A stretch of 64,000 nucleotides of DNA, from the NCBI GenBank assembly GCA_965240325.2, contig OZ251249.1, positions 930,001-994,000 of the forward strand, given 5' to 3'. Position numbers and translations under genes: made by a program. This DNA comes from Rebecca billardiae RCC1528. Taxonomy: Eukaryota; Protista; Haptophyta. Under the pieces are notes generated by a model, which made no database searches, had not been told where the DNA came from, and was given only the letters and a program-made list of their open reading frames with translations. The number at the start of each line of letters is the position of its first letter. The stretch's first letter is position 1. This document shows positions 9,642-48,141 of the stretch, piece by piece.

Positions 9642-10017
9642 GCCTGAGCAGCCTGTCGGCGCGCGGAGTGACGTTCACGACTCACGTGCCCGTCAGCATA
9701 CATCACCAATCGGGTCGCGGTGCCTGCTGGCATCCTCCTCAACCTCTACATCCTCCTCGGCCGCTCAGTGCGCAGTAGTTGCGCCGAGAAGGCGGCTGCC
9801 ATGCGGTGGTGTTGGGGCGCGTTATGGCTGTCGTGTCTGACACAGACTGACTCACGGTGACTGTGTGTTCGGCCCCGGACGACAACGAGCCCTCTTCCGC
9901 GCGCTCGCATCATCTCCGCCGTTGAGTGTGTTCACAGCCACGCCGGCGGCGGGGACGCGCTGGAAGATTGCTCCAGCCTTCCGCGCCAACTTTGAGCTTA
10001 CCAAGGGCAGCATCATA

Positions 10018-17729: not shown

Positions 17730-18305
17730 GCGCGAGGCGCGGGCGTGGGCGGGGCCGCGCGGCACGCCGCCGGCGCTTCCGTCGGCCGACGGAAGCGCCG
17801 GCAGCTGCCGGCCCGGGGCCGGGCGGCCGCGACCGCTTCAGCCGATTCGTCTGAGGCTGCTGCGATTATTCAGCGCGGCCCGCGTGCGCGGTGCGTCGTG
17901 CAGCAGCGTGCCCGTGCTGCTGCGCACGCTGGCGCTGCCCGCCGTGTGATGCACGCGCGTGGCGCGTGGCGTGCATGCCGATGGGCCGGCGTGCGGTACA
18001 TATACCGCGATATTATATATATATACAAACACGCACTATATACGCGCATCAGCGCGCATCAGCAACCGGCGGATACGAAGCCTGACGATGATGATATATG
18101 CATGCATACATATATATATATATATATATGACGATATGATGCACATGATGATGCGCGAAGTCGTAGATCGCCGGCGCGCGCGCGCGCGGTCAGCAGCAGC
18201 AACAGCACCGCGCGCGGCGCATCATCACCGACCGTCCGTCGTCGCATCGTGGTCAGCGCCTGCCATGCCGTGCGAGCGCGCGCGGCGCGCGGCGTGCGGC
18301 GAGTC

Positions 18306-25776: not shown

Positions 25777-26784
25777 ATGCCCAGGCAGTCGAGAGGACTC
25801 CGCGTCGGCCTCCTCCTCGTCGCCTGGTTCGAGGTGGCGGGGGCGCTCGACCGCGACGCGATCGCCGCGTGCTTCCCGCGGTGGGAGCGCCTCGCCCTCG
25901 CCACCGTGCGCACGCGCGACGGCCGGTTCGAGTACCCGATGGCCGTGCACGCCCAGAACGATGTCGTGTCCAGCGAGCTGCTGCGCTCGCACACGTGGGA
26001 GATCGACGCGCCGGCCGCGATGGGTGAGGGCGCGGGCGTGCGCATCCCGCCGTCAGGCACCTTCCTCGACATCGGCGGCAACCTCGGCTACTACAGCCTG
26101 CTCTTCGCCAAGTACGGCTGGCGCGTGATCACGGTCGAGCCGATGCCGCACAACGTGGCGGCCATCAACGCGAGCCTGTGCCTCAACCCGGACATCCGGC
26201 ACCGGATCACGCTGGTGAACACGGCGCTGAGCTCGCGCACGACGGGGATGTGCGGCATCCGCTCGCGGGGGGACCGGAACGTGGGCAACGGCATCCTGCT
26301 CTGCCCGGTGGACTGCAGCACGCACGGGCGGCAGATCCGGCACCACAACTTGAAGTGCGCGGACACCGTCCCGCTCACGACGCTCGACCGCGTGCTTGCG
26401 GCGCTGCGGCCGGCCTCGATCGACGTGGTGAAGGTGGACATCGAGGGCTCCGAGTGCGACATGCTCACGGGCGCGCGCTCCCTCTTCCGCGGCGGCGAGG
26501 GCGGGTACCGCCCGCTCGCTGTGCAGATTGAGAGCGGCCGGCGCGGGGAGAACGCGCGCTGCCTCGACAAGCTCGTGGCCAACGCGAGCCGGGAGTGTGA
26601 GCGGAGAGCGTACGGCGGGCCGGGGGCCGCGGAGGGCGTGGGGGTGCCGCCTGCGGCGGCAGAGCGCGCGGGGGCGGCACATCCGCGGCAGCAGCCGTGT
26701 GGCACCTACGCCAGCGGCCGCGCTGGCACCAGCAGCCCGGGGAGCGACCACTTCGTCTTCCTGCGCATGCCAGCAGCCGCCTGA
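25777..26784 (+). CDS. FkbM-family methyltransferase (Methyltransf_21) with signal peptide, intronless
   Basis: FLDIGGNLGYYSL, VITVEPMPHN, VPLTTLD, IDVVKVDIEGSECDMLTGA. Confidence 0.9.
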   Translation: MPRQSRGLRVGLLLVAWFEVAGALDRDAIAACFPRWERLALATVRTRDGRFEYPMAVHAQNDVVSSELLRSHTWEIDAPAAMGEGAGVRIPPSGTFLDIGGNLGYYSLLFAKYGWRVITVEPMPHNVAAINASLCLNPDIRHRITLVNTALSSRTTGMCGIRSRGDRNVGNGILLCPVDCSTHGRQIRHHNLKCADTVPLTTLDRVLAALRPASIDVVKVDIEGSECDMLTGARSLFRGGEGGYRPLAVQIESGRRGENARCLDKLVANASRECERRAYGGPGAAEGVGVPPAAAERAGAAHPRQQPCGTYASGRAGTSSPGSDHFVFLRMPAAA

Positions 26785-26925
26785 GCGGGCCGGGTGATGG
26801 CAGGGCCAGGCGGCAGTGCGGGCGAGTTGACGAACTATACGCGGCGTGGCCGCCTACTCTGGCCGGCCGACACAGAGTTATACTGTTATAGCAGCGTCAG
26901 CTGCCCCGGGCCTGCGTCAACTACA

Positions 26926-28824
26926 TAGGTGGGCCCACAGCCATTTAAAAATGAAAACACAATCTCTCTGGCTTTTTCGGACCGCAGCCGTGCTCTTTTT
27001 CTCGCGCTGAAGTCCCTTTTTCCAGGCCGCCAAACTCCCGGTCCGGGAAGCCGGTCGATCGCGAAAGCGATGACCGGGATCGACCTGTGCGCGTCGTCAG
27101 CGCGTTGTCCGCCGCGCTTGCCCGCCTGCCATGCGAGGCACGCTGCGCCGCACGCCCGTGGCGTGCGGCGTAGCCCTCTGGAACGAGCCATGCGAACGGT
27201 TCATCCCTGGGTCATCTTCCCGGTCTGCCATCTCTCGCCGACAGTCGCACGTTCAAACACGGGAACAGCTTTGAGGATTGTAATGCGAGCACAACGCGAG
27301 CTTGGGACACCCTTGAACGAACTGGTACACTCCGGAGCGTTACTGGTACAGCATCTACATGGCATCCTGGCAAGGCCCAGCTACTTCTGCGGCCCTGCGG
27401 AGACCCGCCTCGTCGGTCAGGTCCCCGGAAGTCTGTGCGGTGTGACCGAACGCTGTGGCTGTTCACATGATCGTGGGCACTTGGGGAAGGATCTGATGGT
27501 CAAACAGCGGTCAAAGTGGATGCGCGTGCCGTCTGTTACCTCCCCGGCCTCGACTCAACTCTCAGTGCCGACGCACCTCAGGTGTTTGGAAGCTACGAGC
27601 CCCTTGGAGGGCCTCGAGCCACACGATTGCACGAGGTCGGGCTGCGCGTCAAGCCGGGTAGATCGCAGCTGATGCGCTTGTTGAGCCCTGTCGTGGCTCT
27701 ACGCGTACCTCAAGAGCCCAGCTACTCCCCCCGCGCGGCCGCACAGCAGTCGCCCCGCCTCTGCTTGGTCATCCGCTGTGCGCCGTGCTCGCTGCGGACA
27801 GTACAGTTGATGCGTTCACCAGTGATTTGAGCCCTTCGTGAGCCTGCCCGAGCACGTTGGTGGCGCCGCCGACGCCGGTGCACGGTCAGCAGGCGTATCA
27901 GCTTACCTGCGAGCCATGTCTCGCCCTGCTGCCACGCAGGAAGCGGTGATGAGTGCACATCGCTACGCGCGCGCGCGCACCACGGCGAGCCAGCTCGGCG
28001 CTGCGACGAAGCGGCCGTTGCGCACGGTTAGGCAAAGGACGGTCCAGCTGAGGACAGCTCGGACACAGCTTGGTCGCAGTGTAGAGCAACGGTTAGGTCG
28101 GGGCATGAGAAAAGGCGTTCGATGCATAGCAGTGCCTGCCTTGAACGCCACAGATGAGCTCTCGACGAACCTTGTCCGCCGTGTTTACGCTGCGGGCTGC
28201 TGGATGGGCCCGGCGCCGCGTGCACCACTCCTGCTTTCCTTGACCACGGCGGGCGGGCTGGCGCCGCGACTCGGTGCGGCTCAATCTTTGCCCACGGCTC
28301 CTTAAGACTCATCCTTCGAGGGTAGAAGGGTTGGAAAAATTCTTAGGTGTCACATGCACGCCGTACGGCTGCTACGAGAGCAGTCTGAAACCGTCTGAAA
28401 TACTATGGCAGCCATGCTGATCAGCATGGCGGTGTATATGTAACGCACGAGTGTAACGGCCGTTATCCCGTATTCTCACAGTGCCCATATACGCCGTATA
28501 TGTGACAATGGGTGTGCATGCTGCTGAAGACCTATGATCAGCTCATCAAAGTGCTATATCAAAGTGACGTCTGTCGACCCTATATATATCACGTTTAAGA
28601 CGCCCGTTACATGGCCGTTACATTGGCCACATGCCATTTCCAATAAGTAAATAGGACCACCGTTACGTCCTATATTTACAGCATGTACCACTGGTTTTTT
28701 AACCAGGCAGGCCGCAGGGGCCATCTCATGGGGCTGGAATCCAGCTCGAGACGAAAGTAAACATCGCGCTATGAGCTCGCGCTCTGCGTCACTATAATCC
28801 CACAGTGGCCAGTGGGCCCACCTA
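26926..28824. mobile_element. Non-autonomous TAGG..CCTA TIR element E1 (hAT-like termini, 1899 bp)
   Basis: Perfect 13-bp TIR TAGGTGGGCCCAC...GTGGGCCCACCTA and a lower-GC interior without a recognisable ORF. Confidence 0.8.
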
Positions 28825-28829
28825 AACTA

Positions 28830-29611
28830 CAGGGGCTCCAACATTAAACTGGACACTTTGGGCAGCAGCTCAGCGTACGGCCTGTGGCTGCCTCGCGCGG
28901 GGTCAGGAGTGGCCAGCTCGGCTCGTGTGCACCCCACTAGGTCTGTCTGCGACCGCGCATAGCCGGGCAGCCCGCGTGGAGCACCCCTCTGGGTCATGCG
29001 GACAGTCGGCACAAGGCTGGTCGTGAGGGCCGTGAAGCAGCCGTGTGGCTTCTGCGCATGTCTGTAGCCAGCAAGCCCGCTCAAGGCCGCGCAGATATTA
29101 TTACGTGGCATGGTCGATGACTATGCGGCATGCGCTCGACAGCCCTGGGCAAGCCCGGACGTAGCGCTACACCAGGAGTATATACGGCTCGATCGGACCA
29201 GCCTACCAGTTGCGCACCTCGCTTGCACAGCTGCTGCACAGCCCATCGATCGGCTCTGGCCGTGCAGGCAAGGGCTACAGTCGGCGCCACTACCCGCAGC
29301 GAACGCTGGAGACCCACCAGTGCGCGCACCAACCCGCCCGCCGCCAAATGCAACCGTGCGCCAGATACGAATTTTAGCAGGCATGCCACCCGCGGGGGCT
29401 CCGTGGACCTGTTCAGAGCCAACCGCTAGTCGGTTGAGCTGTACATCCAAGCCAGCCCTGGCCACACGCTGAGCGCGCCGCTCGCTGCACCCACACCCTG
29501 TCGTCATCCGAGGAGTAAGGTCCATGGCGCTCATGCGAGCCTCTGGCCCATCTCATCGTTAGCAGCCGTAGTCAGCAAAAATCAGTGTCCGAACAATTGT
29601 TGGGGACCCTG
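28830..29611. mobile_element. Tc1/mariner-type non-autonomous element (782 bp)
   Basis: TA|CAGGGGCTCCAACATTAAACTGGACACT...AGTGTCCGAACAATTGTTGGGGACCCTG|TA: an imperfect 28-bp TIR with a TA duplication. Confidence 0.8.
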
Positions 29612-29614
29612 TAT

Positions 29615-31575
29615 TAGGTGGGTCCCTGGCGATTTTCCAGCGGTCTTTTAAACATTTACCGGGTTCTCTGCTGGCCGGATTTCTTTCGCGCGGGGCGCGG
29701 CTCGGGAAAATCGCCGGGCCGCCGGCCGAGGTCCGATCTGAACGCTCCCGACGATGTCGGAGTGCCTCTCCAGCGCGACCGAGCCGCCGTGTGTCGGGTA
29801 GACTACTGCCAACACCTATCGCGCGCTCCAGCGCTTTGCGCGTGCTCACGGATGGGATCCGTGGTCACACATCCCCCGCCTGGCACGTGCCCGCATGTTT
29901 GACTCTCGCCCGGCTAGACGCGTACAGACAACTTGAATCGATCGGCAGGTGTTCGACCCGTGCCTTCGAGCAGGGTCACTTTTCGCTACAGGCGGGTCAG
30001 GCGACGGGAGGCATGGGTCACCACCAGGCATGTGCATACTCTTGACGCTCCCGCCATCTTGAGCAGCTCTACGCACCGTGAAGGTGACAATTGGGCTGCG
30101 CGCAAGCTGCTCGTGAGAACGCACGACAGCCAGCCCCGGGCTCTCGGGGAGCCATGTGAGCGATTGGCGACTTCCGAGAGGGCGTGTTTGGTGGGGCTTG
30201 GTACCAATCATCGACCAGCAGGCCTGGGATGGGTGCACTGAGGACTTGGGATGCTGAGAAGCCGCCGCGATGTGCATCGAGCACGCTGACTTGCCATCCG
30301 TGTGCACGATCCAGCGCCAGGAAGATCAGCAGGGCCTTTGACAGCGGCAGCAGGCGCTCAGCGATCCTTCCCTATGCCGAGTGTGGGCATAATATGCGGT
30401 GCTCGAGCGTGGTCGCAGGATATGGGTCCATTCTTGACAGAACGCGGTCGCGTTGACAGGCGCGGGTGCCACCCCACGCTGTTGCTCCTGCCATCGGGTG
30501 GTCCCACTCGTTCCGCTTGTTATCTGCGAAGACTCGTACTCAGCAAATCTACGGCTAGGCGTGGTAGACCCCTCAGACGCATGTCTGATGATTGCCCGGC
30601 ACGTTCTCGTCGTCACGTTGGGTGTACCTGAGCGAGCGGAAGCCGCAACGTGATGGCTAGGCCAGCAGCTCAACCATCTGACGTCTCGCCGGCCAACTGG
30701 CTGAGTGCTCTCAGCCTAGCAGCAGCGTCGGTGAACCTATCGTATTGCTGCCTGGCAAGAAGATTGCAGGAGGTATCGTCGACGGCATGGGCTGCAGCTG
30801 CGGTAGTCGTGGACTGGTGGCGGCCTCACGCGGGTGGGCATACGACGACCGGTGACACGCGGAGTACGAGCACGGAAGCCGCCGAGCGCGGCAAGCTCCG
30901 GCGGTGGCGTTGGCTGATAGTCCAGCCTCGACGGCGGAGGGCTCCCGTGTGACGACGGTGGCATGCTCGGTGGCGGGCGATGATGCGTGCCTCGGCACGC
31001 AGCCCGCCACAAACACTGCCACTCGCAGGCAGTCCGGTTGCGGCCCGGTTTGCCTGTGTCCGCGTCGCTCGGCGCCTATTCGATGACCCAACAAACGTAC
31101 CCACATATCGGAACGAATTTGAATATATAGTGAGCCACATCCACGGTCAATATAGAGTGGGTAAACGTCGTTCTATATACGGGTAATTGTCTATATACAA
31201 AGTGGGTAATCTGCTCGATCTTGCTGCAGTTTGTTGGAGGTATCCGCGCACAGCATAGAGCCCCACTCTTTGCTTCATAAAATGGTTCGGTCGGGTGTCA
31301 ACGGTTGCCAATAAGTCATTCCGATCGCATGTCGCCATCTAGCCACCATAACCATCAAGTAACGCTTCGCAAAATCTCTATGTGACACTAGTGGCGCGGC
31401 GCGCGCGCGCTCGGCCGCGCGACGGCACGCGGAGTAGGTTTTGAGGTCGAAACTTTTGCTCCGCCCCGATGGGACGCATTTATAGCGTCGATTCTGGGTG
31501 AGAGACGAAATCTAGGACGCCATTCTGAGTGCGCCAGATTCCAGAACATCGCCCCAGTTGGGAGGGACCCACCTA
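29615..31575 (+). mobile_element. Non-autonomous TAGG..CCTA TIR element E2, copy 1 (1961 bp)
   Basis: TIR TAGGTGGGTCCCT...AGGGACCCACCTA. A full-length inverted copy lies at 41211-43178. Confidence 0.92.
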
Positions 31576-31586
31576 CAACTATAGCA

Positions 31587-33277
31587 GACAGGTTGCACGG
31601 AAAAATGACCGCCCGCGACTGACAGATGTTACATTCCCAGTGGACGCGACCTGTCCACCCGTCTTTCGGTACATGGCGCCGTCGCCGTGCGCTCGGAAGC
31701 GGCGCGCGCTCTCGCGCGCTGCACGATGCCCGCTGTTGCGGGTGCAGCGCGCCACTCCGCGCCTCGATCGGCCTCTTCCTGCTTGAGTAGCATGTACCGA
31801 AAGTCAACCACCCTTGAGCTCCAATCGCGACATCGCGCAGCCGCGCGGCACGTTCACGTGGCATCTGAGTCGCAGAGGGCAGCAGAGCAGGCCGTCTCAG
31901 CCTGGAAGAGTTCCAGGCCCGGTGTGAAGAGAGGTAGCAATGCAAGGTGGATACGTGCCATGCACATCGCAGTCTGGCCGCACACGACGTTCGCAGCCTA
32001 CGACTCGCGCGTGCGTGCTTGCGCTCGGCCACGTCCATGCATCAGCTGTGCATGCATTGGATGGAGCGCGCGCGCGACTGGTCTTGCACATCACGTTGCG
32101 CAGCAACAGTCGCGGGAGGAGACACGCGACACTCATAGAATGCGACAACCTTGCAATGTTCATCCAGCGCGTGTTGGTGAGGGTCGAAAAGCTGGCGGCG
32201 GCTACCTCTCAATCGCTCGGTTGCACTTGATGGTGCATGCGCGCCGGCCGGAGCGCTGAAGTGTCAGAGTCGTGGCATGCTCGAGGCTCTTGGATGAGGA
32301 GATGGCCGCTACGCAGTCCGTCTATGTCGTCAGCATGAAGAACGGCATCCACGCACGACGCCTCTCGAACGCACACGTGCTTCCGCGCTGTGACACGCAT
32401 CGACAAGAACTGCTCGGCAGGCTGACGAGGCACCACGCCTCACTCACGCCCAAGAACAGCAGGGCGAGTGCTAAGGAGCGGGCGAAGGAAGCTGTCACTC
32501 GCTGCGGCAAGGACGCTCTTACTGTACGAATGGTCAGTGAGCCCTACATAGCCTTCTTTGTCTCGCGTGAGCGCAGCACCAAGGGTGAGGCGCGAGGTGT
32601 TGCGCAGACGGTCGCACAGGCTCACGTAGACAGCTCGATGGTGATCATCGAAAGCCTCTATCGAGTGTTCAGATGCAGAGCGCGTGCGTACACCGAGCAG
32701 GAGCTGACGACCTACATGCTATCATGCCACGCGTGGATCTCCCCGCCGGCCCACAAGTCGCTGACGACTTACTGTCGAACTCGAATGCTCGCGCGCGGCA
32801 CTGCTGGCGAAGGCTGCACTCGTCGACGAGCTCGGTCCGATCATGACGGTTTGCCATACTGCGCGTGGTGACGGGCGTTGGCGGGCTCGAGGCGGATGGC
32901 GCGGGCGGTGTGAAGCAGATAGAGCCGGGCGTGTGCGCTCGCTCCGAGACGCGTCGAAGGGAGGACTGTCTCCAGCTGCCTGATGATCCTGGTCGAGAGG
33001 GTGATGCTGCTGTGGCTTTGCCGTCTCATCACGCGACGTGTGCTGGGATGATGACAGTCACTGCCGACGGCGAGGGTGTCCCGGCTGTGCTAGCTCAAGG
33101 GATGTAGCGCACGCGGACAAGTCCTGACGACACGCGCATTCAGCTAGTCATCATGCGGGGCTGCATCGACACGCGAGGCGCGCGCCACCCACGAGCGGCG
33201 AGTGGGCGGGCGCCATCCTTCAGAGGCGCCGTCTCTGAGAAATGTAACACCAAGGACAGTTTCCTGTGCAACCTGTC
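31587..33277. mobile_element. GAC..GTC TIR element with a 4-bp target-site duplication (TSD) (1691 bp; superfamily uncertain, Sola-like TSD length)
   Basis: AGCA|GACAGGTTGCACGGAAAAATGACC..TGTTACATT versus AATGTAACA..GGACAGTTTCCTGTGCAACCTGTC|AGCA. Confidence 0.82.
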
Positions 33278-33797
33278 AGCATTAATTCCGTAGTAGTATT
33301 CGATGCCGCGCGGTAGTCGACTGCTACGGTGATGACCGGCTGATGACGACGCGATGAGGAGTAGCACTGGCACTCGGCTGAGCCTGAGGGCGGCGATGAG
33401 GCTCAACTCTGCGGCTCTGCGCAATGCCGCCGTGCTGAGTGCGTGCCCGCGACAAGTTTTCCGGCGCGGCCAGCTGCCGAGTGGCCGCGGCCGGTCGGAG
33501 TGATGCTGATTCCGGGCCCGGGGCCGGGCTGCCGGCGGCTCATCGGGCGCGCGGTAGCAACATGCGCGATGATGCTCGAATGATCACACTGCGGAGAGTC
33601 GTCGGATGGACGCTGTCCGGGATGCCCCTTGGCCTTGCCATCGCCTGATTCTGATCGCCCACGACTGAGCGACGGCGGCCCGAAGTTGGCGTTGCAGCAG
33701 CAGGCCCAGGGCCTGGCGTCGGAGCAGGGCGGCTCCGACAGGGCAGACAGGGCAGCCCGCGCGGGCTGCGCACGGCGCCGCCCCCGCGGCGCGAGGC

Positions 33798-34226
33798 TCA
33801 GGGCATGGACATGTCGAAAAGGCCGGCGTCATCCGCGCCCTCGCCCTCCGCCGCGCGCGCGCCGTCGCTGCTGAAGCCGGCAGGCAGGTCGGCGGGCACG
33901 CCGCTGCCGGTTGGCGCGGCACCTGGATCCTCCAGGAAGGGTAGGTCCATGCCGGCTTGTCTCCCGGCCGCTCGTGCGCGTGGCTCTCCCCGCAGGGGGA
34001 CGGCGGGTGTGCGGCGCAGTGGCGGCTCCACGTCCGAACGGACAGGCGCGCCCGGCACGCTCGCGGCGTGGTCGACGAAGCCGTGCTCGAGGACGGCGAC
34101 CGCGTGGCCGGGGGGCTTGCTCACGCGCGCGGGGCCGGTGAGCACGAGCACCACGGCGAAGACGACGAGGACGCCCAGGCAGCAGCCGGGCACCAGGCTG
34201 CTGGGGCGTTGGCGGCTGAGCCCCAT
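33798..34226 (-). CDS. Small hypothetical type-II membrane protein
   Basis: ATG start, hydrophobic CCLGVLVVFAVVLVL and host-like codon usage. No family recognised. Confidence 0.35.
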   Translation of the reverse strand: MGLSRQRPSSLVPGCCLGVLVVFAVVLVLTGPARVSKPPGHAVAVLEHGFVDHAASVPGAPVRSDVEPPLRRTPAVPLRGEPRARAAGRQAGMDLPFLEDPGAAPTGSGVPADLPAGFSSDGARAAEGEGADDAGLFDMSMP

Positions 34227-34536
34227 GCTGACGGCACAAGCCCGCGGGAGCGGCTCATCGGAGCCACACCCTCGCCTCCCGTCGTCGGCTTGGGCAACGC
34301 ACGCGCGTTCTTCAGTTTGGCTGGTCAGTATCGGCTTGAGAGTGATTCACCTTGATGGTGACGACACGATTACAGTACGACTGTACAATCGAATCGAGTG
34401 TGCAGTCGGCTCGTGCACACTGCACAGCTACCTCAGCTACAGTAGGCTCAGCGAGCGCGGGCGCGCTGCCGGCGGCGCACCCCTGTCACGCACCGCGTGC
34501 GCGCATCGCCACCACCGGCCGCCACAGCCCCAGCGG

Positions 34537-35388
34537 TCAGGCCGCCGCCGGCTCGAGCGGCGGCGCCGCCCCGCCCTCCTGCGGCCCGCCGCCGTCCTGC
34601 GCAAACGGCCGGCCAAAGCCGTCGGCTCGGAAGAGCTCCGCCAGGGGGAAACGGCCCGCGCGCGGCCGCGCGGCGGCGTCGGGCGTGGCGTAGCCGATGG
34701 CGATGGCGCAGGGGATGGCGTAGCGGCGCGGTATGCCCAGCGCGCGGCGCACGCGCCGCTCGTCCAGCCCCTCCATCGGCAGGCTCGCCAGCCCCTCCTC
34801 CGCGGCCGCCAGCATCAGAGTCTGCGCGGCGAGCATCGTCGACTTGACCGCCCACGTCTCCGGGGTGGAGAGCTTGGGCACGGCGCGGAAGAGGCCGACG
34901 AGGAGCATCGCCAGCCGCTTCGCCACGAACATCGGCCAGCGCACCCAGCCCCAGCGGTACCCCGACGCGAACAGCGACACATAGAAGGGCAGCTTACCCA
35001 CGTACTCGGCGGGCGCGCCGGACGCGCGCGCGAGCTCGGCGGCGGCGGGCACGCGGTGGGAGGAGCGCAGGTCGGCGGCGAAGACGGCGACGAGCGGGGC
35101 CTCACGCACGCGCTCGCCGTTCGCCGCGAGCATCCCGCGCGCCAGCGCCTCGCGCGCGCCGCCCTCCTGCACGAGCACGCACGCCCACGGCTGCACGTTG
35201 AAGGACGACGGCGCGAGCGCGGTCGTGGCGGCGAGCGAGCGCACGAGCTCGGGCGCGATGGGGCGGGACGGGTCGAAGCGCTTGCACGCGTACCGCGCGC
35301 GCGCCGCCGCGGCGACCGAGCCCGGCGCGGCGCCGCCTCGCGCCGCGAGCGCCGCGAGCGCGACGAGCCGGAGCGCGCGGCGCAGCAT
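34537..35388 (-). CDS. Nitroreductase family protein (FMN-dependent)
   Basis: RYACKRFD..LAPSSFNVQPW..LAAQTLMLAAAEEGLASLPMEGLD..AIAIGY. ATG at 35388. Confidence 0.92.
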   Translation of the reverse strand: MLRRALRLVALAALAARGGAAPGSVAAAARARYACKRFDPSRPIAPELVRSLAATTALAPSSFNVQPWACVLVQEGGAREALARGMLAANGERVREAPLVAVFAADLRSSHRVPAAAELARASGAPAEYVGKLPFYVSLFASGYRWGWVRWPMFVAKRLAMLLVGLFRAVPKLSTPETWAVKSTMLAAQTLMLAAAEEGLASLPMEGLDERRVRRALGIPRRYAIPCAIAIGYATPDAAARPRAGRFPLAELFRADGFGRPFAQDGGGPQEGGAAPPLEPAAA

Positions 35389-35626
35389 GGCGGCCTCGTG
35401 TTTGGCGGAGATGGCAGACGATGGCAGACTGATCCGCAGATGCCGATCGAAAAATCGCGCAGGCAGCCTCTGCATCAGGTCATTCGCGCTCGTAATTATG
35501 CCGGCGGCCTTGCTGATGCCAAAGAAATAAAGGGGGGTTTGCTGATGCCAAGGTGCTGCGGTGGGCTGCCGCTGCGCCCAGTGGCCACGCGGTGCGCCTT
35601 GCAGCGGGGTATCAGCTGATTGCGCG

Positions 35627-38600
35627 ATGACGCCACGACTCGTGCTCGCCCTCGCCGCGCTCGCGCTTAGCGCGGGCGGCGCGCGCGGCTTCCACGCGCC
35701 GCGCCCGGCCCGGCACGCCACGCGCACCCGCCTCGGCGCGGCGCCGCTCGCCATGGTCGCGACCGGCACGGCCGCGGCCAACGGCACCGCCGCGGGCGGC
35801 GCGATCGGCGCGGCCGACCTGACGACCGCGTCGTCGATGGCGATGGAGGTGGTCTCGGCGACGCCCTTCTCGCCGCGCGCGGGCGCGAAGCCGCGCACGC
35901 CGCGCAAGTCCCTCCCGCGCCGCGTCGTCGGCGCGATCGGCGGCGTGCTCACCGCGCCCTTCCGCGCGCTGCGGCTGCTCGGCGCGGCGCGCACGGCGGC
36001 GGGCGAGGCGCGCGGGCTGCTGGACGAGGCGTGCGCGATCGACGGCGACGCGGGCGAGTGCGCCGACGCGAGCGCGTACCGCTCGGGCCTCGGCGAGATG
36101 CGCCGCCTCGTGAGCAGCACGCTCGGCGCCGCCTTTGGCCGCGGCGCCGACGCGCGCTCTGCGGACGACGACGCGGGCTTTGCGATGCAGGCGGGCTGGG
36201 AGCAGCGGGGGCAGGGGTCGGCGTTCCGCCGGACGATCGAGGTGTGGCGCTTCCTGCTCTCGGCGGTGCTGCGCGTCGTCAAGGCCTCGCGCCTCTCCAA
36301 GAAGGGCGTGCCGGACGCGGACGTCTCAGCCGCCAAGACGAAGGTGTGGGCCGCGCCGCGCGCCAGCGAGCGCCGCGCGCGCGCGCCGGCCGCGGGGGGA
36401 CGGGCGCCGATGCCGCGCGGCCGCTGGCTGCTGGCGGCGCGCGTGCGTGCGCGCGCGGCGAGGAGGAGGGTCGGCGCCACGCGCGGGGCGTGCTCGCTGC
36501 GAGCGCGTGGCGTGTGCACGCACACTCGGCGCGCCGCGCGGGCGGCGCGCGCTCGCGCCCGCGCGCTGCGCGCTCTCGCCTTCCGCCCACGCGGTGGCGC
36601 CGCGCGGGCTGCGCCCCCCGCCCCGCCCCCCGTCGGCGCAGGCGGCGGAGTACATCCGCGACGGGCTGCTGCAGCTCGGGCCGACGTTCATCAAGCTCGG
36701 CCAGGTCATCTCCACGCGCACCGACGTGCTCGACGCCGAGTACATCGCCGTGCTGCGCTCGCTACAGGACGACGTGCCCGGCTTCAGCGGCGAGCGCGCC
36801 AAGAGTATTGTGAGTAAGGAGCTGGGGCAGCCGTGGGAGCGCACGTTCGACTCGTTCGAGGACGCGCCGATCGCCGCCGCGTCGCTCGGGCAGGTGCGCG
36901 CGCGCGTGCGCGCGTGCGCGCGCGTGCGCGCGCTCGGGCGTGGCGCGGGCGGCGTGCGCGCGGCCCTCACGGCAAGGGGGTTCACGGCGGCTGCGCGCGC
37001 GGCCGCGCTGCGCTGCTTGCTTGATGCGCGCGCGCGGCGGCGGCGCCGCGCTGGCTCGCAGGTGCACTCGGCCGTGCTCAACGGCACGCGCGTGGCGGTG
37101 AAGGTGCAGCGCGCGGGGCTGAAGGAGCTCTTCGACCTCGACCTGAAGAACCTCAAGGCACGCCGCAGAGCGCGCGGCGCCGCCGCCCTCCGCGCGCGGC
37201 CGGCCAGCGCGCGCGGTCAGATCGCGCGCGCGCGCCGTCGGGTGGCGCGCCGCTCAGCCGCGCCGCCGCCGCTCGCCCCGGGCTGCGCGCGCGTGCGCGC
37301 GCAGGTGCTCGCCAAGCTGCTCGACAAGTTCGACCCGAAGACCGACGGCGCCGACCGCGAGTGGGCCGCCATCTACGACGAGTCCGCCAGATTGCTCTAT
37401 CTCGAGATCGACTACCTCAACGAGGCGCGCAACACGCTGCGCTTTGCCAAGAACTTTGAGGCGCAGCGCGACACGGTGCGCGTGCCGCAGGTGTACCTGG
37501 AGTACTCGACGCCGCGCGTGCTCACGATGGAGTACGTGCAGGGGTACAAGCTCACCGAGGTGGCCAAGGTGCGCGCGCCGCACACCGCGCGCGCCGCCCG
37601 CCAGCGTTGGGGCGCGCGCGCGCTCGCGCGCGCGCGCGCGTGCGCGCGTGTGCGCGCGTGTGCGCGCGTGTGCGCGTGTGCGCGTGTGCGCGTGCGCGCG
37701 TGTGCGCGTGCGCGCCCGCCTCCAGCGCTCTCAGCCTGCCAGCTGCGCGGCTGCCCCGCCCTCGCCCCGCCGCCAGCTCGAGTCCCTCGGCCTCGACCGC
37801 TCCCGCCTCGCCAAGAGCGTGGCGGAGACCTTCCTGCAGCAGCTGCTGCGAGACGGGTACTTCCACTGCGACCCGCACCCCGGCAACCTGGTGGCTGACG
37901 CGCAGGGCAGGCTGGTCTTCTACGACTTTGTGCGCGCGGGGAGAAGGGAGGGGCCGGGCGGGCGCGCGGGCGGGCGGGCTGGCGGGTGTGCGGGTGGGGA
38001 GGGGCGCTGAGCGGCCGTCATCCGCCCCGCGCGCGGCTGCGCCGTGCCCCGCGAACGCGCGCCGCTCAGCCGCGCCGCCCGCGCCGCGCCCGCCGCCGCC
38101 ACCGCCTCCACTCGCCTTCGCCTTGGCTCGCCTTCGCCTTGGCCGTCGCCTCTGGCCGCCCGCTCGGCCCCTCGCCTCTGCTCAGGGGATGATGGACGAG
38201 CTGAGCCCGGGCGTGCGCGACGGCTTCCGCGAGTTCTGCTTCGCGCTCTTCGGCGGCGGCCCGTACATCTCCGACGCGCAGCTCGCCGCCAGCGCCAAGC
38301 GGCTGGTCGAGGCGATCGCGCAGATGGGCGTGCTCTCGCGGTCCGCGGACGCGCTCGCGGTCGAAAAGCTTGCGCGCTATTTCATCCGGAGCTTCAAGGA
38401 CGCGCAGCTGGGGAAGGGGCGGTCGAACATCAAGAGCACGCTGGGCAACGACCTGCGCACGCTCACCGACGAGAACGTCTTCCGCTTCCCCTCCACCTTC
38501 ACCTTCGTCTTCCGCGCGTTCGCCTCGATCGACGGCATCGGCAAGGGGCTGGACGAATCCTTCGACCTCGGCCAGCTGGCGCAGGTGCGGGGGAGGGCGC

Positions 38601-41087: not shown

Positions 41088-41210
41088 CGCGCCGCCCGGC
41101 CTGACGATGAGGCTCCGCCCGATGAGCGTCGTGGCATGCAATGGGCAGCAGGCGTGGCGAGGGCGGAGGGCGGCCGCGGCACGTTGAAGCATACTCTTTA
41201 GTCAACTGTA

Positions 41211-43178
41211 TAGGTGGGTCCCTCCCAACTGGGGCGATATTCTGGCGCACTCAGAATGACGTCCTGGATTGTCTCTCACCCAGAATCGACGCTATAAATG
41301 CGTCCCATCGGGGCGGAGCAAAAGTTTCGACCTCAAAACCTACTCCGTCTACTCTGACCGTCTCCGCGTGCCGTCGCGCGGCCGAGCGCGCGCGCGCCGC
41401 GCCAGTAGTGTCACATAGAGATTTTGCGAAGCGTTACTTCATGGTTATGGTGGCTAGATGGCGACATGCGATCGGAATTACTTATTGACAACCGTTGACA
41501 CCCGACCGAACCATTTTATGAAGCAAAGAGTGGGGCTCTATGCTGTGCGCTGATACCTCCAACAAACTACAGCAAGATCGAGCATATTACCCACTTCATA
41601 TATAGCCACTTACCCGTATATAGTATGAGTGTTACCCACTTTATATTGACCGTGGATGCGGTTCACTGTATATTCAAATTCGTTCCGATATGTGGGTACG
41701 TTTGTTGGGTCATCGAATAGGCGCCGAGCGACGCGGACACAGGCAACCCGGGCCGCAACCGGACTGCCTGCGAGTGGCAGTGTTTGTGGCGGGCTGCGTG
41801 CCGAGGAACACAACATCGCCCGCCACCGAGCATGCCACCGTCGTCACACGGGAGCCCTCCGCCGTCGAGGCTGGACTATCAGCCAACGCCACCGCCGGAG
41901 CTTGCCGCGTTCGGCGGCTTCCGTGCTCGTACTCCGCGTGTCACCGGTTGTCGTATGCCCACCCGCGTGAGGCCGCCACCAGTCCATGACTACCGCAGCT
42001 GCAGCCCATGCCGCCGACGATGCCTCCTACCATCTTCTCGCCAGGCAGCAATACGATAGGTTCACCGACGCTGCTGCTAGGCTGAGAGCACTCAGCCAGT
42101 TGGCCGGCGAGACGTCAGATGGTTGAGCTGCTGGCCTAGCCATCACGTTGCGGCTTCCGCTCGCTCAAGTACACCCAACGTGACGACGAGAACGTGCCGG
42201 GCAATCATCAGACATGCGTCTGAGGGGTCTACTACGCCTAGCCGTAGAGTTGCTGAGTACGAGTCTTCGCAGACCACAAGCGGAACGAGTGGGACCACCC
42301 AATGGCAGGAGCAACAGCGTGGGGTGGCACCCGCGCCTGTCAACGCGACCGCGTTCTGTCAAGAATGGACCCATATCCTGCGACCACCCTCGAGCACCGC
42401 ATACTATGCCCACACTCGGCATAGGGAAGGATCGCTGAGCGCCTGCTGCCGCTGTCAAAGGCCCTGCTGATCTTCCTGGCGCTGGATCGTGCACACGGAT
42501 GGCAAGTCGGCGTGCTCGCCGCACATCGCGGCGGCTTCTCAGCATCCCAAGTCCTCAGTGCACCCATCCTAGGCCTGCTGGTCGACGATTGGTACCAACC
42601 CCCACCAAACACGCCCTCTCGGAAGTCGCCAATCGCTTACATGGCTCCCCGAGAGCCCGGGGCTGGCTGTCGTGCGTTCTCACGAGCAGCTTGCGCACAG
42701 CCCAAATGTCACCTTCACGGTGTGTAGAGCTGCTCAAGACGGCGGGGACGTCAAGAACATGCCCATGCCTGATGGTGGCCCATGCCTCCCGTCACCTGAC
42801 CCGCCTGTAGCGAAAAGTGGCCCTGCTCGAAGGCACGGCTCGAACACCCGCCGATCGATTCAAGTTGTCTGTACGCGTCTAGCCGGGCGAGAGTCAAACA
42901 TGCGGGCACGTGTCAGGCGGGGGATGTGTGACCACGGATCCCATCCGTGAGCACGCGCAAAGCGCTGGAGCGCGCGATAGGTGTTGGCTGTGGTCTACCC
43001 GACACACGGCGGCTCGGTCGCGCTGGAGAGGCGCTCCGACATCGTCGGGAGCGTTCAGATCGGACCTCGGCCGGCGGCCCGGCGATTTTCCCGAGCCGCG
43101 CCCCGCGCGAAAGAAATCAGGCCAGAAAACCCGGTAAATGTTTAAAAGACCGCTGGAAAATCGCCAGGGACCCACCTA
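41211..43178 (-). mobile_element. Element E2, copy 2 (inverted, 1968 bp)
   Basis: Reverse-complement match to 29615-31575 from end to end, with the same TIRs. Confidence 0.92.
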
Positions 43179-43516
43179 ATTACAACCGACAGTGGGGCGC
43201 CACGTTCCTTACTACATCCTCATCCTGTCGGCGCGCTGTTGCATCGGCGCCCAGTCGGCGAGTTCGGACGACGACGTTTTGTGGACGACGGTGGGGCGAG
43301 GACGACGGGCGCTGGCGCGCCGCGAGGCGGCCGCAGCCCTCATCCAGGCCTCGCAGGCGGACGGCTGAACGAATTTTTCCGGCGGCGCTACCATCGGCGA
43401 CGGCTTCATGGGCGGTGACAGTTGGCGGGCGTCAATCTCGCCTGCCTGAGCTGTGTGCGTCTCTTATTCTTAGTAAACTGTTGTTGCAAAGGGCGCCCTT
43501 GACAGTACGGATGAGT

Positions 43517-45635
43517 CAAAGGAATGAAAGAGAGATAGGACGGCAACTCCAGTGACCGAGGTCATGCGAAAGACGCCATCGTGCGGGGGGCCGCAGCCCG
43601 CTGAGCCGAGGCGCAAGCCGGGGCCGCACCCTCCCTCCTGCTCCCGGGCGCCGCTCCGCCACGGGCGTGCACGCCGCGAGTTCGACGCGCGCGGCGCTGC
43701 CATGCTGCCGACGCTTCGACCGGATCGTCGACCGGCTGCCGCCGCGCCCGCGCCCGCCGCCGAGCCCACCGGGTGCGCCACGCGCTGCGCGGCATGCGCG
43801 GGCGCCGAACTGACCGGCGCCGCCGCGAGCGCCCGCACGAGGGGCGAGAGAGTGGCAATTTCGCGGGTGTTAAGGTTTGAATGTGGGGTTGGGCCAATCC
43901 AGCTCCCATACAGACCTTAACACCCGCGAAAATGTCCCCAGACCGTGCGCTCACGATGCGCGTATGCTACCTGCCTGGGTGCAATGAAGCTGGTTGTGCA
44001 CCTCTGCGAGCGCCGTCGCCCAAGTCGAGAGAGCGGATATTTCGCGGGTGTCTTTGTTTGGGCAGTGCCCCGTGTTACTACTCTCGGCATACACGCCCAA
44101 AGACCCGCGTTCTAGACCACAGGGCGCGAGCAGACCACGACGCGCACACGCTGCGCGCCTTGGCACAATGCACCTGGCCATGCGACGCCCGTGCGAGCGT
44201 CGTCCGAGGCGAGAGAGGGGGCGATTCGCGGGTGTCTTTGCTTCTTTGGAGGGTTGTGCCCATGCCCTTGGCATGCAGACCTTAACACCCGCGGTTTGTC
44301 CGAAGACCGCGCGCTCACGACAGCGCGCGCGCGCTGCGCGTCGTGGTCAAGCGAATGCAGACTGCCTAGCCCCAACCAGCGTTCGGCACTGGCGGATATC
44401 GACGACGATGCTGAGTCGCGGTCGGAGAGAGACGATGGCAGTCACCTGGGTCAGATTGCAGCCTCTAGAGTCGGCACATACAACAGAGGCTTCTGACTAG
44501 GTGCTAGGCAGCGTGCGCAACGATGATGTTCGGTCTATGAAGTGATCGCGCCTAGCGACTACTGTCCCGCCCGTGATGATAATACCCTGGGCCACTCGGT
44601 TGCATCATGCCATTATTCATGGCATCGCGGTGGATATGAATGGCACGCGCATGATGTCTCCGGCAGGTTTCCTTGAAGATGATACGAGCATCTGCCTGCG
44701 TTGGGCGACGCTCTCTAGGCTCTAGCGCGTTCAAGGATGGCGCAGTTGCTGTTGGCAGTGCTTGCAGCTAGCCGAGTCCTCCACGACGCGCAGCGCGCGC
44801 ACGCTGTCGTGAGCGCGCGCTGTCGTGAGCGCGCGGTCTTCGGACAAACCGCGGGTGTTAAGGTGTGCGTGCCAAGGGCATGGGCACAACCCTCCAAAGA
44901 AGCAAAGACACCCGCGAATCGCCCCCTCTCTCGCCTCGGACGACGCTCGCACGGGCGTCGCATGGCCAGGTGCATTGTACCAAGGCGCGCAGCGTGTGCG
45001 CGTCGTGGTCTGCTCGCGCCCTGTGGTCTAGAACGCGGGTCTTTGGGCGTGTATGCCGAGAGTAGTAACACGGGGCACTGCCCAAACAAAGACACCCGCG
45101 AAATATCCGCTCTCTCGACTTGGGCGACGGCGCTTGCCGAGGTGCACAACCAGCTTCATTGCACCCAGGCAGGTAGCATACGCGCATCGTGAGCGCACGG
45201 TCTGGGGACATTTTCGCGGGTGTTAAGGTCTGTATGGGAGCTGGATTGGCCCAACCCCACATTCAAACCTTAACACCCGCGAAATTGCCACTCTCTCGCC
45301 CCTCGTGCGGGCGCTCGCGGCGGCGCCGGTCAGTTCGGCGCCCGCGCATGCCGCGCAGCGCGTGGCGCACCCGGTGGGCTCGGCGGCGGGCGCGGGCGCG
45401 GCGGCAGCCGGTCGACGATCCGGTCGAAGCGTCGGCAGCATGGCAGCGCCGCGCGCGTCGAACTCGCGGCGTGCACGCCCGTGGCGGAGCGGCGCCCGGG
45501 AGCAGGAGGGAGGGTGCGGCCTCGGCTGCGCCTCGGCTCAGCGGGCTGCGGCCCCCCGCACGATGGCGTCTTTCGCATGACCTCTGCCCGCGCCGCACTA
45601 CTGGGAGTTGCCGTCCTATCTCTTTCATTCCTTTG
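43517..45635. mobile_element. Foldback-type element: ~830-bp inverted arms around a ~430-bp spacer
   Basis: 43517-44346 is the reverse complement of 44781-45635. Ends are CAAAGGAATGAAAGAGA...TCTCTTTCATTCCTTTG, with repeated CGCGGGTGT motifs in the arms. Confidence 0.9.
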
Positions 45636-45691
45636 GTTGGATGGCGTTAATCACGCCTTAACCAAGTGTGCACGTTTCAATCATAGTAAAC

Positions 45692-46392
45692 TGTGGCTGA
45701 GTCAGTTTAAAATCCCCTTTTTAGTGCAGGGGTCGCGATCCGAGTTAGCTAGCCTACCCGAAGCGCCTCGTCGAGAGGAGCACGTAGAGCCCAAGAACGT
45801 CGACGAAGGACCAAAATTGGGCGAGAAAATCCATTTTTTTGAATTTCTGAGAAGTGTGAGTCAGATTGGATCTGAGACTGCTGCCAGCCTGAGCCGCGCG
45901 CCGCGCGGCAGCGCGCGCGCTGGGCGCCGGGCGGCGGCCAGCGCGTCAAGAGGTCACGACGCAGCTAAAGACGCATGTCGCTGCCGCACCCACTGGCGCA
46001 GCTTGCTCAGTGCATCCTGTCAGGCCTGTAGGCAGCGTGTCTGGCGCTTGTCGAGGCCGGCATCACTCCACGCCGCCATCCGACGTGAGCCGCTCCGTGC
46101 CGTGAGCCGAGCTGCTGCATGACTCAGCACCTCGTCCTTGAACATGCCGCATGTCGGCGGTGCTGCTCGCTACGATCACCTCCCTGCTGACTCGGCTGCG
46201 ACCGAGCCCATCCAGTTGGCTCCGATCACCGCGGCTCGCCCAGGACGGCCGACCGCAGGCATGCTGGCAACCGCACGGGCGGCCCACTCTGAGCTTGCGG
46301 GGTGAGTCAGCGGGTTTCGACTTTCTTTAACCGGGCTTTGCGCGGAAAAAGTTTCCCTTCGCCGAAGGGGAATTTAAACTGACTCAGCCACA
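45692..46392. mobile_element. MITE family A, copy 2 (701 bp)
   Basis: Same TIR and interior as 10018-10732, same orientation, flanked by AC/AC. Confidence 0.92.
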
Positions 46393-46507
46393 ACAGGTCT
46401 CTCTTCGGAGAGCGTGCGCTTGAAGGATGGCGCGGCAACCTGCCACCGTGAGCCTTACGCACGTTAAAACAAATAAACTGTACGGAGTGCGACTCGATGA
46501 GCGCACG

Positions 46508-47335: not shown

Positions 47336-48141
47336 GGCGGGGCGCGTGCTCGGCGGCGGGGCGGGCGGGGCGGGCGGGGGCGCGGCGCGTGGCTGCTGCC
47401 GCCGCGCGGGCTGCTGCCGCGTTTTCCATCGGCTCGTGGAGCGTCGGCGCCGAGTTTCTGCTGATGCCAGCGGTGGACGAGTGCGCGCGCGCTCCGGTAT
47501 CGATCGCTGTCGTCTGACACTACGACTACTGCGCGCGCGCCGCTACTCTGAGTAGCGCAGCTGACTCCGCTGCGGCAAGGGCTGCGGACCGCCAGGTTGA
47601 TGCTGATATGATATGATAGGACTACTATATATATACGACACATGCAATGCACGCCGCGCATATGATATGCTTATCATTATTATTATATATTGCCGCCTGC
47701 GGCCACGCGAGCGGGCAGCGGCGACCGCGCCGACTAATGACCGCCGCCGCGCGGTGCCGGCGGCACTCTCGTAGTGCCTCGCCCCGGGGTGCGGCACCGC
47801 CCGCCTGCTGGGCCCGCGCGCGCGCCGCCGCCGCCGCGCTGGCATCGCCGCGGCGGCGGCCGCAGTGCGCCGCAGCGCTTCTGACACATGCCCACACGTA
47901 GCAGGCCTGCCTGCCGCCGCTGCTGCTGCTGCTGCTGCAGCCCCGCAGCCGCGGAGTCGCAGCCGCCTTCCCTCCCCTCAGGAGCGGCGCGGTGCGGGCG
48001 CGGCCCCTCGCAGCCCCACCGCCGTGGGCGCAGCCGCAGCGCGCGCAGCCCCCACGGGCGGCCGGCGGCCCAGTGCCGCACAGCGTCGCCGGCGGTGCGC
48101 TACGCCGCGCCTCTGCCCTCCATGGCACAGGGGCGAAGCCG

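What the first reader, a model, noticed from the sequence alone, without database searches (positions are those of the whole stretch)
26918..33281. Four different TIR elements stacked end-to-end at one ~12-bp site (a transposon 'landing pad')
Seen: E1 (26926-28824), a Tc1-like element (28830-29611), E2 (29615-31575) and a GAC..GTC element (31587-33277) are separated by only 5, 3 and 11 bp (AACTA, TAT, CAACTATAGCA). None is nested inside another, although each offers 0.8-2 kb of lower-GC interior. Removing them and their duplications reconstructs an empty site of about GCGTCAACTATAGCATTAATTCCG. Inference: three end/TSD classes (TAGG/8-bp-like, CAG/TA, GAC/4-bp) converge on one spot. That points to host-defined targeting (an open AT-rich site or a tethering factor) or to targeting of existing element ends, i.e. 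a safe-harbour array.
Basis: partly seen in the sequence, partly recalled or inferred. Interest (0 to 1): 0.8.

Follow-up and report, generated by a model that had tools for sequence, protein, structure and literature searches.

The report
Four transposons stacked at one spot
Four unrelated jumping genes landed one after another within the same 11 bases just downstream of a gene in a very GC-rich alga, and the last is missing from two other read sets of the same organism; this looks like an insertion hot spot of a known kind, not a new targeting system.

Summary

Other copies give the target duplications: 7 bp for both TAGGTGGG families (not 8), TA for T, and 4 bp for E4.

The duplications fix the order. 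E2 entered CAACTAT. T entered the TA of E2's left duplication. E1 entered AACTA|CA across T's left junction. E4 entered the adjoining AGCA.

Two public short-read assemblies with 100% identical flanks carry the predicted intermediate allele. T and E4 are present there and E1 is absent. So the order, the reality of the locus and very recent E1 activity are shown directly.

Genome-wide, the three junction types occur only here. The block is therefore not one composite element, and these families do not generally seek each other's ends.

E1 and E4 clearly prefer AT-rich targets; E2 does so only weakly. Recognisable flanking genes mostly point their 3' ends at the insertions.

In 33 other copies, abutment exceeds an AT-matched expectation only marginally (3 versus 1.0).

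Best reading: repeated use of a scarce TA-rich patch that each duplication regenerates. A dedicated tether is not excluded. The scan noted abutting TIR elements elsewhere in this genome (s1-371971).

The parts
25777..26784 (+). Upstream gene for a protein with an FkbM-type methyltransferase domain. Its stop codon ends at 26784, 134 bp before the stack.
   Evidence: Pfam PF05050, E = 1e-10. The exact protein is found on two Logan contigs.
26918..26925 (.). C, the first base of E2's original target, followed by AACTACA, the left copy of E1's 7-bp target duplication.
   Evidence: Sequence. The 7-bp duplication rule comes from other copies.
26926..28824 (.). E1: a 1899-bp non-autonomous TIR element with 13-bp perfect TIRs (TAGGTGGGCCCAC). 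It was the last to arrive and is absent from two public read sets.
   Evidence: The E1-empty allele is in L049 and L050.
28825..28831 (.). AACTACA, the right copy of E1's duplication. Its last two bases (CA) are the first two bases of T. The TA at 28828-28829 is T's left TA.
   Evidence: Sequence. L049 has a single AACTACA running on into T.
28830..29611 (.). T: a 782-bp Tc1/mariner-type unit with CAGGG...CCCTG ends, flanked by TA. It inserted into the TA of E2's left duplication.
   Evidence: No protein domain was found.
29612..29614 (.). TAT: T's right TA, plus the last base of E2's left duplication.
   Evidence: Sequence. Reconstruction.
29615..31575 (.). E2: a 1961-bp non-autonomous TIR element with 13-bp perfect TIRs (TAGGTGGGTCCCT). 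It was the first of the three ordered arrivals.
31576..31582 (.). CAACTAT: the intact right copy of E2's 7-bp duplication.
   Evidence: Sequence. 7-bp rule.
31583..31586 (.). AGCA: the left copy of E4's 4-bp duplication.
   Evidence: The 4-bp rule holds in 10 of 11 other copies.
31587..33277 (.). E4: a 1691-bp non-autonomous TIR element with 12-bp perfect TIRs (GACAGGTTGCAC). It is present in the two public read sets.
   Evidence: Junction confirmed in L051 and L052.
33278..33281 (.). AGCA: the right copy of E4's duplication, followed by the unique flank TTAATTCCG.
34537..35388 (-). Downstream gene on the minus strand with a nitroreductase domain. Its 3' end faces the stack, so the site lies between two convergent genes.
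   Evidence: Pfam PF00881, E = 1e-24, on the minus-strand frame. The start codon is not settled.

Best explanation
The stack is the product of four separate cut-and-paste insertions into one small favoured target, CAACTATAGCA. The target is a TA-rich patch containing the palindrome CTATAG. It lies 134 bp past the stop codon of a methyltransferase gene, in the 1.4-kb gap between two convergent genes, in DNA that is otherwise about 79% G+C.

Shown:
- E2 went in first and duplicated CAACTAT.
- T then used the TA inside the left copy of that duplication.
- E1 then used AACTA|CA, five bases of the same target plus T's first two bases.
- E4 used the adjoining AGCA, before E1 arrived.

Inferred:
- Each insertion duplicates the target, so the favoured sequence survives beside the new element and can be hit again. 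This is the 'double insertion' route known for single families, here used by three transposase types.
- The spot is favoured because targets these families like are scarce outside existing transposons. E1 and E4 clearly prefer low-GC, TA-rich targets; E2 does so only weakly.
- Gene 3' flanks are where insertions of these families occur or survive.
- No dedicated tether or attraction to element ends is needed.
For: - Order and independence: duplication lengths from other copies fit only the order E2, then T, then E1.
- Intermediate allele: the state with T and E4 but without E1 exists in two read sets whose flanks are 100% identical. It is absent from the assembly itself.
- AT preference: insertion sites of E1 and E4 sit at the median 7th and 12th percentile of local GC, and E2 at the 31st.
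- The E2 and E4 targets here are in the lowest 3.7% and 0.9% of local GC.
- At least four of the six breakpoints of inserts nested in other E1 copies fall in E1's AT-rich segments, which make up 14% of its length (P = 0.005).
- Scarcity: non-transposon DNA in the window is 78.7% GC, with one CTATAG in 45 kb.
- Gene context: 8 of 27 long frames pointing at insertions carry Pfam domains, against 1 of 23 pointing away (Fisher P = 0.03).
- Both E2 copies in the window lie 117-141 bp past a stop codon.
- Abutment recurs elsewhere: four other copies lie within 20 bp of another repeat's end; a second stack lies at 41.2-46.5 kb; and at least 12% of the listed ends of an abundant Tc1-like MITE have another such end within about 17 bp (counted by eye).
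- The mechanism is published for single families (PMC5932611).
Against: - E1's target was not AT-rich once T was in place (62% GC over 21 bp).
- The locus-restricted AT-matched probability of the three later placements is about 6e-5.
- All three abutments among these families in 72 Mb are at this one site. This points to extra local hotness that sequence preference does not obviously explain.
- AT-rich (TA)n patches at 17996-18153 and 47594-47699 carry no element.
- No target consensus emerged for the TAGG families (by eye).
- In the sample of other copies, excess abutment over the AT-matched null is only marginal.
- Targeting and post-insertion selection cannot be separated with these data.
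Confidence: 0.55

Rival explanations
1. This particular spot is a host-defined landing pad. A local chromatin state (for example a nucleosome-free terminator region between the convergent genes) or a bound factor directs several unrelated transposases here, beyond what base composition explains.
For: - All three junction types are unique to this site genome-wide.
- The joint AT-matched local probability is about 6e-5.
- E1's target was not AT-rich.
- The newest event, E1, absent from near-identical read sets, again hit the same few bases.
- Insertions of these families lie downstream of gene 3' ends.
Against: - There are no chromatin or binding data.
- No RNA gene or known landmark lies nearby.
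- No shared motif was found at other insertion sites.
- The locus was picked after the fact from a whole-genome scan, and rough expectations allow 0.02 to several such stacks by crowding alone.
Confidence: 0.2
2. No special hotness: a chance pile-up among many thousands of insertions crowded into a small permissive fraction of a gene-dense genome, noticed because the whole genome was scanned.
For: - Order-of-magnitude estimates give 0.02 to 3 four-chains with gaps of 11 bp or less per genome, and many more if the target space is about 1 Mb.
- The AT-matched test on other copies is not significant (P = 0.05-0.08).
- The first transposon island in the window has gaps of 230-460 bp.
Against: - The locus-level probability is 6e-5.
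- The three abutments among about 320 copies all fall at one site.
- A second tight stack lies 8 kb away.
- Double insertions of Tc1-like MITEs are frequent.
- The estimates rest on a copy number and a target size that were guessed, not measured.
Confidence: 0.13
3. Incoming elements are drawn to the ends of resident elements, for example by transposase bound to terminal repeats or by DNA structure at junctions, so arrays grow at their edges.
For: - E1 landed on T's junction, T landed 1 bp from E2's end, and E4 landed 11 bp from E2's other end.
- The second E2 copy sits exactly on the TA next to a Tc1-like terminal repeat remnant and 4 bp from element X.
- The E2 copy in L028 and the E4 copy in L039 abut the end of another repeat.
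Against: - Genome-wide there are no E|E, E4|E4, T|T or E4|T abutments within 30 bp, and no E|T or E|E4 junctions outside this locus.
- Only 13 TAGGTGGG ends have CTGTA within 30 bp. Apart from the three in this window, their spacings show no clear skew toward small gaps.
- Nested insertions do occur.
Confidence: 0.07
4. The block is an assembly artefact, or a single composite element that moves as one piece.
For: None beyond the unusual appearance.
Against: - Each part occurs alone many times with its own duplications.
- The junctions occur nowhere else.
- The duplications nest in a self-consistent way.
- Independent short-read contigs reproduce the flank-T and E4-flank junctions.
Confidence: 0.02

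Closest known systems
Double insertion of a transposon at a regenerated target site, giving tandem dimers separated by one target duplication (McGurk and Barbash 2018, PMC5932611; bacterial IS dimers are cited there)
   Same: A favoured target survives insertion because it is duplicated, and it is then hit again. Neighbouring elements are separated by no more than duplication-length remnants of one target. Such sites are strong matches to the element's preference.
   Different: The published cases are two copies of one family. Here four families using three insertion chemistries share the site. No same-family dimer of the TAGG, T or E4 families exists in this genome.
Safe-haven targeting in gene-dense genomes, such as Dictyostelium TRE and yeast Ty3 retrotransposons upstream of tRNA genes (PMC6101501, PMC5006619)
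   Same: A compact genome in which elements accumulate in narrow harmless windows next to genes. Unrelated elements converge on the same kind of place.
   Different: Those elements are retrotransposons tethered to the RNA polymerase III machinery at a fixed distance from a landmark. Here the elements are DNA transposons, no landmark RNA gene was found, there is no fixed distance or motif across copies, and no tether is shown.
Insertion hot spots inside resident elements and nested transposon clusters (Levy et al. 2010, PMC2836564)
   Same: Later insertions are not spread evenly over earlier ones. They cluster in particular segments. Here, inserts into E1 copies favour its AT-rich segments.
   Different: At this locus the later arrivals stayed at the original target and the junctions, not in element interiors.
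Weak palindromic target preferences of cut-and-paste transposases such as the P element (Linheiro and Bergman 2008, PMC2577343; title and abstract only)
   Same: The site contains the palindromes CTATAG and ATTAAT. By eye, several duplications of the TAGG families contain CTAG or TATA.
   Different: No statistically supported consensus could be derived here. CTATAG lies within 30 bp of E4 ends about ten times more often than its density in the flanks predicts, but at no fixed distance.

Membership tests
Tc1/mariner superfamily (element T) | Insertion at TA with TA duplication | tested here: met
   The solo unit here and the outer ends of the composite copies are flanked by TA.
Tc1/mariner superfamily (element T) | Terminal inverted repeats beginning CAG | tested here: met
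   The ends read CAGGG(G/T)CTCCAAC and GTTGGGGACCCTG, an imperfect repeat over about 30 bp.
Tc1/mariner superfamily (element T) | DD(E/D) transposase, in the element or in an autonomous partner | tested here: inconclusive
   No Pfam domain was found in T or in the 1.2-kb interior of the composite copies. An autonomous partner was not looked for.
   The duplication is 7 bp in 18 of 22 other copies. The remaining four lack a perfect duplication.
hAT superfamily (E1, E2) | hAT transposase with a dimerisation domain | not tested
   The longer E1 and E2 ORFs tested (at least 130 aa) have no Pfam match. No autonomous copy was identified among the listed ends.
piggyBac or Kolobok (E4, 4-bp duplication) | TTAA target | tested here: not met
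   E4 duplications are varied: AGTA, TATA, CATT, CGCG, CTCA, GTGT, TTCC, TGTC, AATT, CTTG, AGCA.
Double insertion at a regenerated target | The junction between neighbours consists only of target-duplication sequence from one original site | tested here: met
   The 5-, 3- and 11-bp spacers are all pieces of CAACTAT and AGCA. The intermediate allele was observed.
Double insertion at a regenerated target | It recurs at other strong sites in the same genome | tested here: inconclusive
   It is common for the abundant Tc1-like MITE ends. Same-family pairs of these four families number zero. In other copies there were 3 abutments against 1.0 expected.
Landmark-tethered safe-haven targeting | A constant position relative to a host landmark across many copies | tested here: not met
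   No Rfam hit lies within 24-36 kb of the window. Other copies share no motif or fixed distance. The only shared trait is a loose bias to gene 3' flanks, 116-370 bp from stop codons.

The most novel reading that the evidence does not exclude
The site is a true landing pad. A property of this precise spot other than base composition, such as a positioned nucleosome-free gap between two convergent terminators, a bound protein or a DNA structure, recruits at least three unrelated transposases to within 15 bp. It is still active, because E1 arrived within the negligible divergence that separates the assembly from two public read sets.
Probability: 0.2. Interest if true: 0.7.

Novelty: new member of a known kind. 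Interest (0 to 1): 0.4.

Why it matters
This is an unusually clean natural record of an insertion hot spot. The target duplications give the order of arrival, and a part-filled allele in public reads confirms it.

It shows that one family (E1) is moving now in this alga.

It also suggests how transposon islands start in a very GC-rich, gene-dense genome. A scarce TA-rich patch behind a gene is hit, the duplication keeps it available, and each arrival adds more low-GC DNA.

If the hotness proved to be set by the host, the site would be a candidate safe harbour for transgenes in an alga that is hard to engineer. As it stands, the mechanism is a multi-family version of something already described.

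Tried and rejected
About 100 listed end flanks and 22 reconstructed sites show no such consensus. Two of the three supporting sites are duplicates of one target.
- AACTATAGCA as a repeated motif was rejected: 35 occurrences against 27 for the reversed control.
- CTATAG as a fixed-distance E4 target was rejected. Six E4 ends have it within 30 bp, at spacings of 2 to 26 bp.
- TAGTAAACTGT as a polyadenylation-type host signal was rejected. It is the end of an abundant Tc1-like MITE terminal repeat plus its TA (1390 hits against 11 for the control; many tail-to-tail pairs).
- TAGG elements seeking Tc1-like ends is not supported: only 13 cases within 30 bp.
- Empty alleles in metagenome contigs: none found for either flank.
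Abutment statistics therefore rest on 33 copies with 1.5-kb flanks plus pattern counts.
- Exact-protein look-ups failed for the 604-aa ORF, three nitroreductase starts, two RCC1 starts and a junction-spanning ORF.
- The 604-aa ORF at 33805-35619 is read as an antisense artefact. It has no Pfam match, its translation is R/A/G/P-rich, and it lies antisense to the nitroreductase frame.
- No paper cites the two run accessions.
- No autonomous partner was identified for any of the four families, and none was searched for.
Full report
**What is there**

The window comes from contig 33 of a 72-Mb, 41-contig eukaryotic assembly.
- DNA outside transposon islands is 78.7% G+C.
- The four elements are about 60-64% G+C.
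  - E1: at least 25 copies at 93-98% identity.
  - T: 40 scored of 74 candidates, mostly 99-100%.
  - E2: 40 scored copies at 95-99%.
  - E4: at least 34 copies at 96-100%.
- E1 and E2 share only the terminal TAGGTGGG. They have no internal similarity.
- Ten of the longer ORFs in the four elements and in the interior of T's composite relatives gave no significant Pfam match. The one hit fell below the curated cut-off. All four are therefore non-autonomous.

**Target duplications and order**

Flanks of 11 other copies per family gave the duplication lengths:
- 7 bp for E1, perfect in 8 of 11.
- 7 bp for E2, perfect in 10 of 11.
- 4 bp of varied sequence for E4, perfect in 10 of 11.
- TA for T.

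Applied to the locus, only one history fits:
1. The empty site was GCGT CAACTAT AGCA TTAATT.
2. E2 duplicated CAACTAT. The right copy is intact at 31576-31582.
3. T entered the TA of the left copy, giving CAAC-TA-[T]-TA-T.
4. E1 then duplicated AACTACA, which is AACTA plus the first two bases of T.
5. E4 duplicated AGCA next to E2's right duplication.

The alternative, with E1 arriving before T, leaves both E1's and E2's duplications mismatched.

**Direct confirmation**

- The upstream gene (FkbM-type methyltransferase domain) was looked up by exact protein sequence in public assemblies. Two short-read contigs from runs ERR14847148 and ERR14847151 carry it.
- Both contigs read from the flank straight into T...GCGTCAACTA|CAGGGGCTCC..., with a single AACTACA and no E1.
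- They match the window at 1209 of 1209 bases, then continue in T.
- A small ORF in the right flank retrieved two further contigs from the same runs. These join E4's right end to AGCA TTAATT. They match at 3679 of 3680 and 1266 of 1266 bases.
- The E1-empty junction is absent from the assembly itself, so it is an allele and not a paralogue.
- Four things follow:
  - The locus is real.
  - E1 was the last arrival.
  - E4 and T preceded it.
  - E1 moved within a span of time that left no substitutions in almost 5 kb of flank.
- E1 is only 97.6% identical to its nearest relative. This is no contradiction, because a cut-and-paste element carries its old mutations with it.

**Is it one element, or a habit of these families?**

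Pattern searches of the whole genome for one family's right end followed within 0-30 bp by another's left end (both strands) gave:

| Pair | Hits |
|---|---|
| E\|E | 0 |
| E\|T | 2, both here |
| E\|E4 | 1, here |
| E4\|E4 | 0 |
| T\|T | 0 |
| E4\|T | 0 |

- The block is therefore not a composite, and these families do not generally seek each other's ends.
- About 183 exact TAGG-type ends were counted through a filter that passes roughly two thirds. That implies about 135 elements.
- Nesting is not avoided. Five E1 copies are split by inserts of 0.2-2.4 kb. At least four of the six breakpoints lie in E1's AT-rich segments, which are 14% of its length (P = 0.005).

**Target preference**

- In reconstructed empty sites, the 21 bp around the insertion is lower in GC than the flanks:
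  - E1: 46% against 66%, median local percentile 0.07.
  - E4: 43% against 65%, percentile 0.12.
  - E2: 58% against 67%, percentile 0.31, a weaker effect.
- At this locus, the E2 and E4 targets are in the lowest 3.7% and 0.9% of GC within 1.5 kb either side.
- No sequence consensus emerged.
- The decamer AACTATAGCA is not enriched in the genome.
- CTATAG lies near E4 ends more often than its density in the flanks predicts, but at no fixed spacing.

**Gene context**

- The site lies 134 bp after the stop codon of the methyltransferase gene. It is 1.26 kb from the 3' end of a minus-strand nitroreductase gene, so it sits between convergent genes.
- The other E2 copy in the window (41211-43178) lies 117-123 bp after the stop codon of an RCC1-repeat gene.
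- For 33 other copies I translated every open frame of at least 300 codons in the flanks and tested 50 of the 64 against Pfam, mostly those ending within about 420 bp of the insertion:
  - 8 of 27 frames pointing at the insertion had domains, with stops 116-370 bp away.
  - 1 of 23 frames pointing away had a domain (Fisher P = 0.03).
- These families therefore sit behind genes, either by targeting or because such insertions survive.

**How unusual is the stack?**

- I restricted the null to this locus and to positions at least as AT-rich as the one chosen. Under that null the three later insertions have these probabilities of lying so close to an existing end:

| Step | Probability |
|---|---|
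| T | 0.048 |
| E1 | 0.014 |
| E4 | 0.091 |
| Joint | about 6e-5 |

- E1's target was not AT-rich by then (62% GC over 21 bp).
- Against this, the locus was chosen after a whole-genome scan.
- With guessed totals of 5,000-16,000 copies in 6-7 Mb of permissive DNA, between 0.02 and 3 four-chains with gaps of 11 bp or less are expected. If the permissive space is nearer 1 Mb, far more are expected.
- In 16 informative other loci, 3 insertions lie within 10 bp of another repeat's end, against 1.0 expected under the AT-matched null (P = 0.08; Fisher combined 0.05).
- Close packing recurs in the same window. At 41.2-46.5 kb, pieces of seven elements follow one another with gaps of 0, 4, 34, 0, 0 and 1 bp. 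In the 9.3-12.8 kb island the gaps are 230-460 bp.
- The motif TAGTAAACTGT proved to be the end of an abundant Tc1-like MITE terminal repeat plus its TA (1390 hits against 11 for the control). By eye, at least 12% of the listed ends have another such end within about 17 bp, often sharing one TA.

**Reading**

- The data fit repeated use of a scarce, favoured, harmless target that each duplication regenerates. This is the double-insertion route shown for P elements and bacterial IS elements (PMC5932611), here shared by three insertion chemistries.
- They do not show a tether, and they argue against general attraction to element ends.
- Three points keep a host-defined hot spot alive as a rival, at about 0.2:
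  - All three cross-family junctions fall at this one site.
  - E1 chose a target that was not AT-rich.
  - The newest event hit the site again.
- Neither flank was found in metagenome contigs, and no RNA gene lies nearby.

**Limits**

- Further genome sequence could not be fetched. The abutment statistics therefore rest on a small sample and a partial repeat library.
- The superfamilies of the TAGG and GACAGG families remain unassigned, because no autonomous copy was found.
- Several counts from long listings were made by eye.

Noticed in passing
L014-L024 (for example L019:1501-3782); coordinates: Elsewhere the 782-bp T unit mostly occurs as same-orientation repeats, T-interior-T or T-interior-T-interior-T, with spacings of 1.6-4.5 kb. 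The outer ends are flanked by TA. The 1.2-kb interior has a 241-aa ORF with no Pfam match.
   Followed up: partly
window 41181-46483: A second tight stack. A Tc1-like terminal repeat remnant ends in AACTG TA exactly at the left end of an E2 copy (41211-43178). It is followed by X (43183-43481), Y (43516-45635), a 58-bp MITE end piece, Z (45692-46392) and a 90-bp piece. The gaps are 0, 4, 34, 0, 0 and 1 bp. The E2 copy's right flank does not repeat its left 7-mer.
   Followed up: partly
genome-wide; window 43471, 45684, 46460: TAGTAAACTG plus TA is the terminus of a very abundant Tc1-like MITE group: 1390 filtered hits against 11 for the control. Many ends occur tail-to-tail across a single TA, or in tandem. 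This suggests frequent double insertion or tandem terminal-repeat arrays.
   Followed up: partly
window 43516-45635: Y is a 2.1-kb element built as a long palindrome. Arms of about 0.8 kb are 97% identical in inverted orientation. At least six copies occur elsewhere.
   Followed up: no
window 10015-10735 and 45692-46392: Two copies (92% identical) of a roughly 700-bp TIR element with TGGCTGAGTCAG ends. At least 15 copies occur in the genome.
   Followed up: no
window 17996-18153 and 47594-47699: (TA)n-rich low-GC patches in otherwise GC-rich DNA carry no transposon. AT-richness alone therefore does not make a site a target.
   Followed up: no
L034:1476-1500 (G000 C18, near 1925690): An E2 copy is preceded by TACAGGGCCCTGA, 12 bp from its end. 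This looks like the two termini of a T-type element with nothing between them, possibly an excision footprint or a minimal remnant.
   Followed up: no
window 33805-35619 (+): This 604-aa ATG ORF is read as an antisense artefact of the minus-strand nitroreductase gene at 34537-36525. Long spurious ORFs are common in this GC-rich DNA, and the gene caller behind the public contigs also calls them (for example the 142-aa ORF at 33798-34226).
   Followed up: yes
G000 C1:595616-595640; L045:3192-3216: Two other E4 copies have AACTATAG within 9 bp of an end, as at the main site. Across all E4 ends, however, CTATAG shows no fixed spacing.
   Followed up: yes
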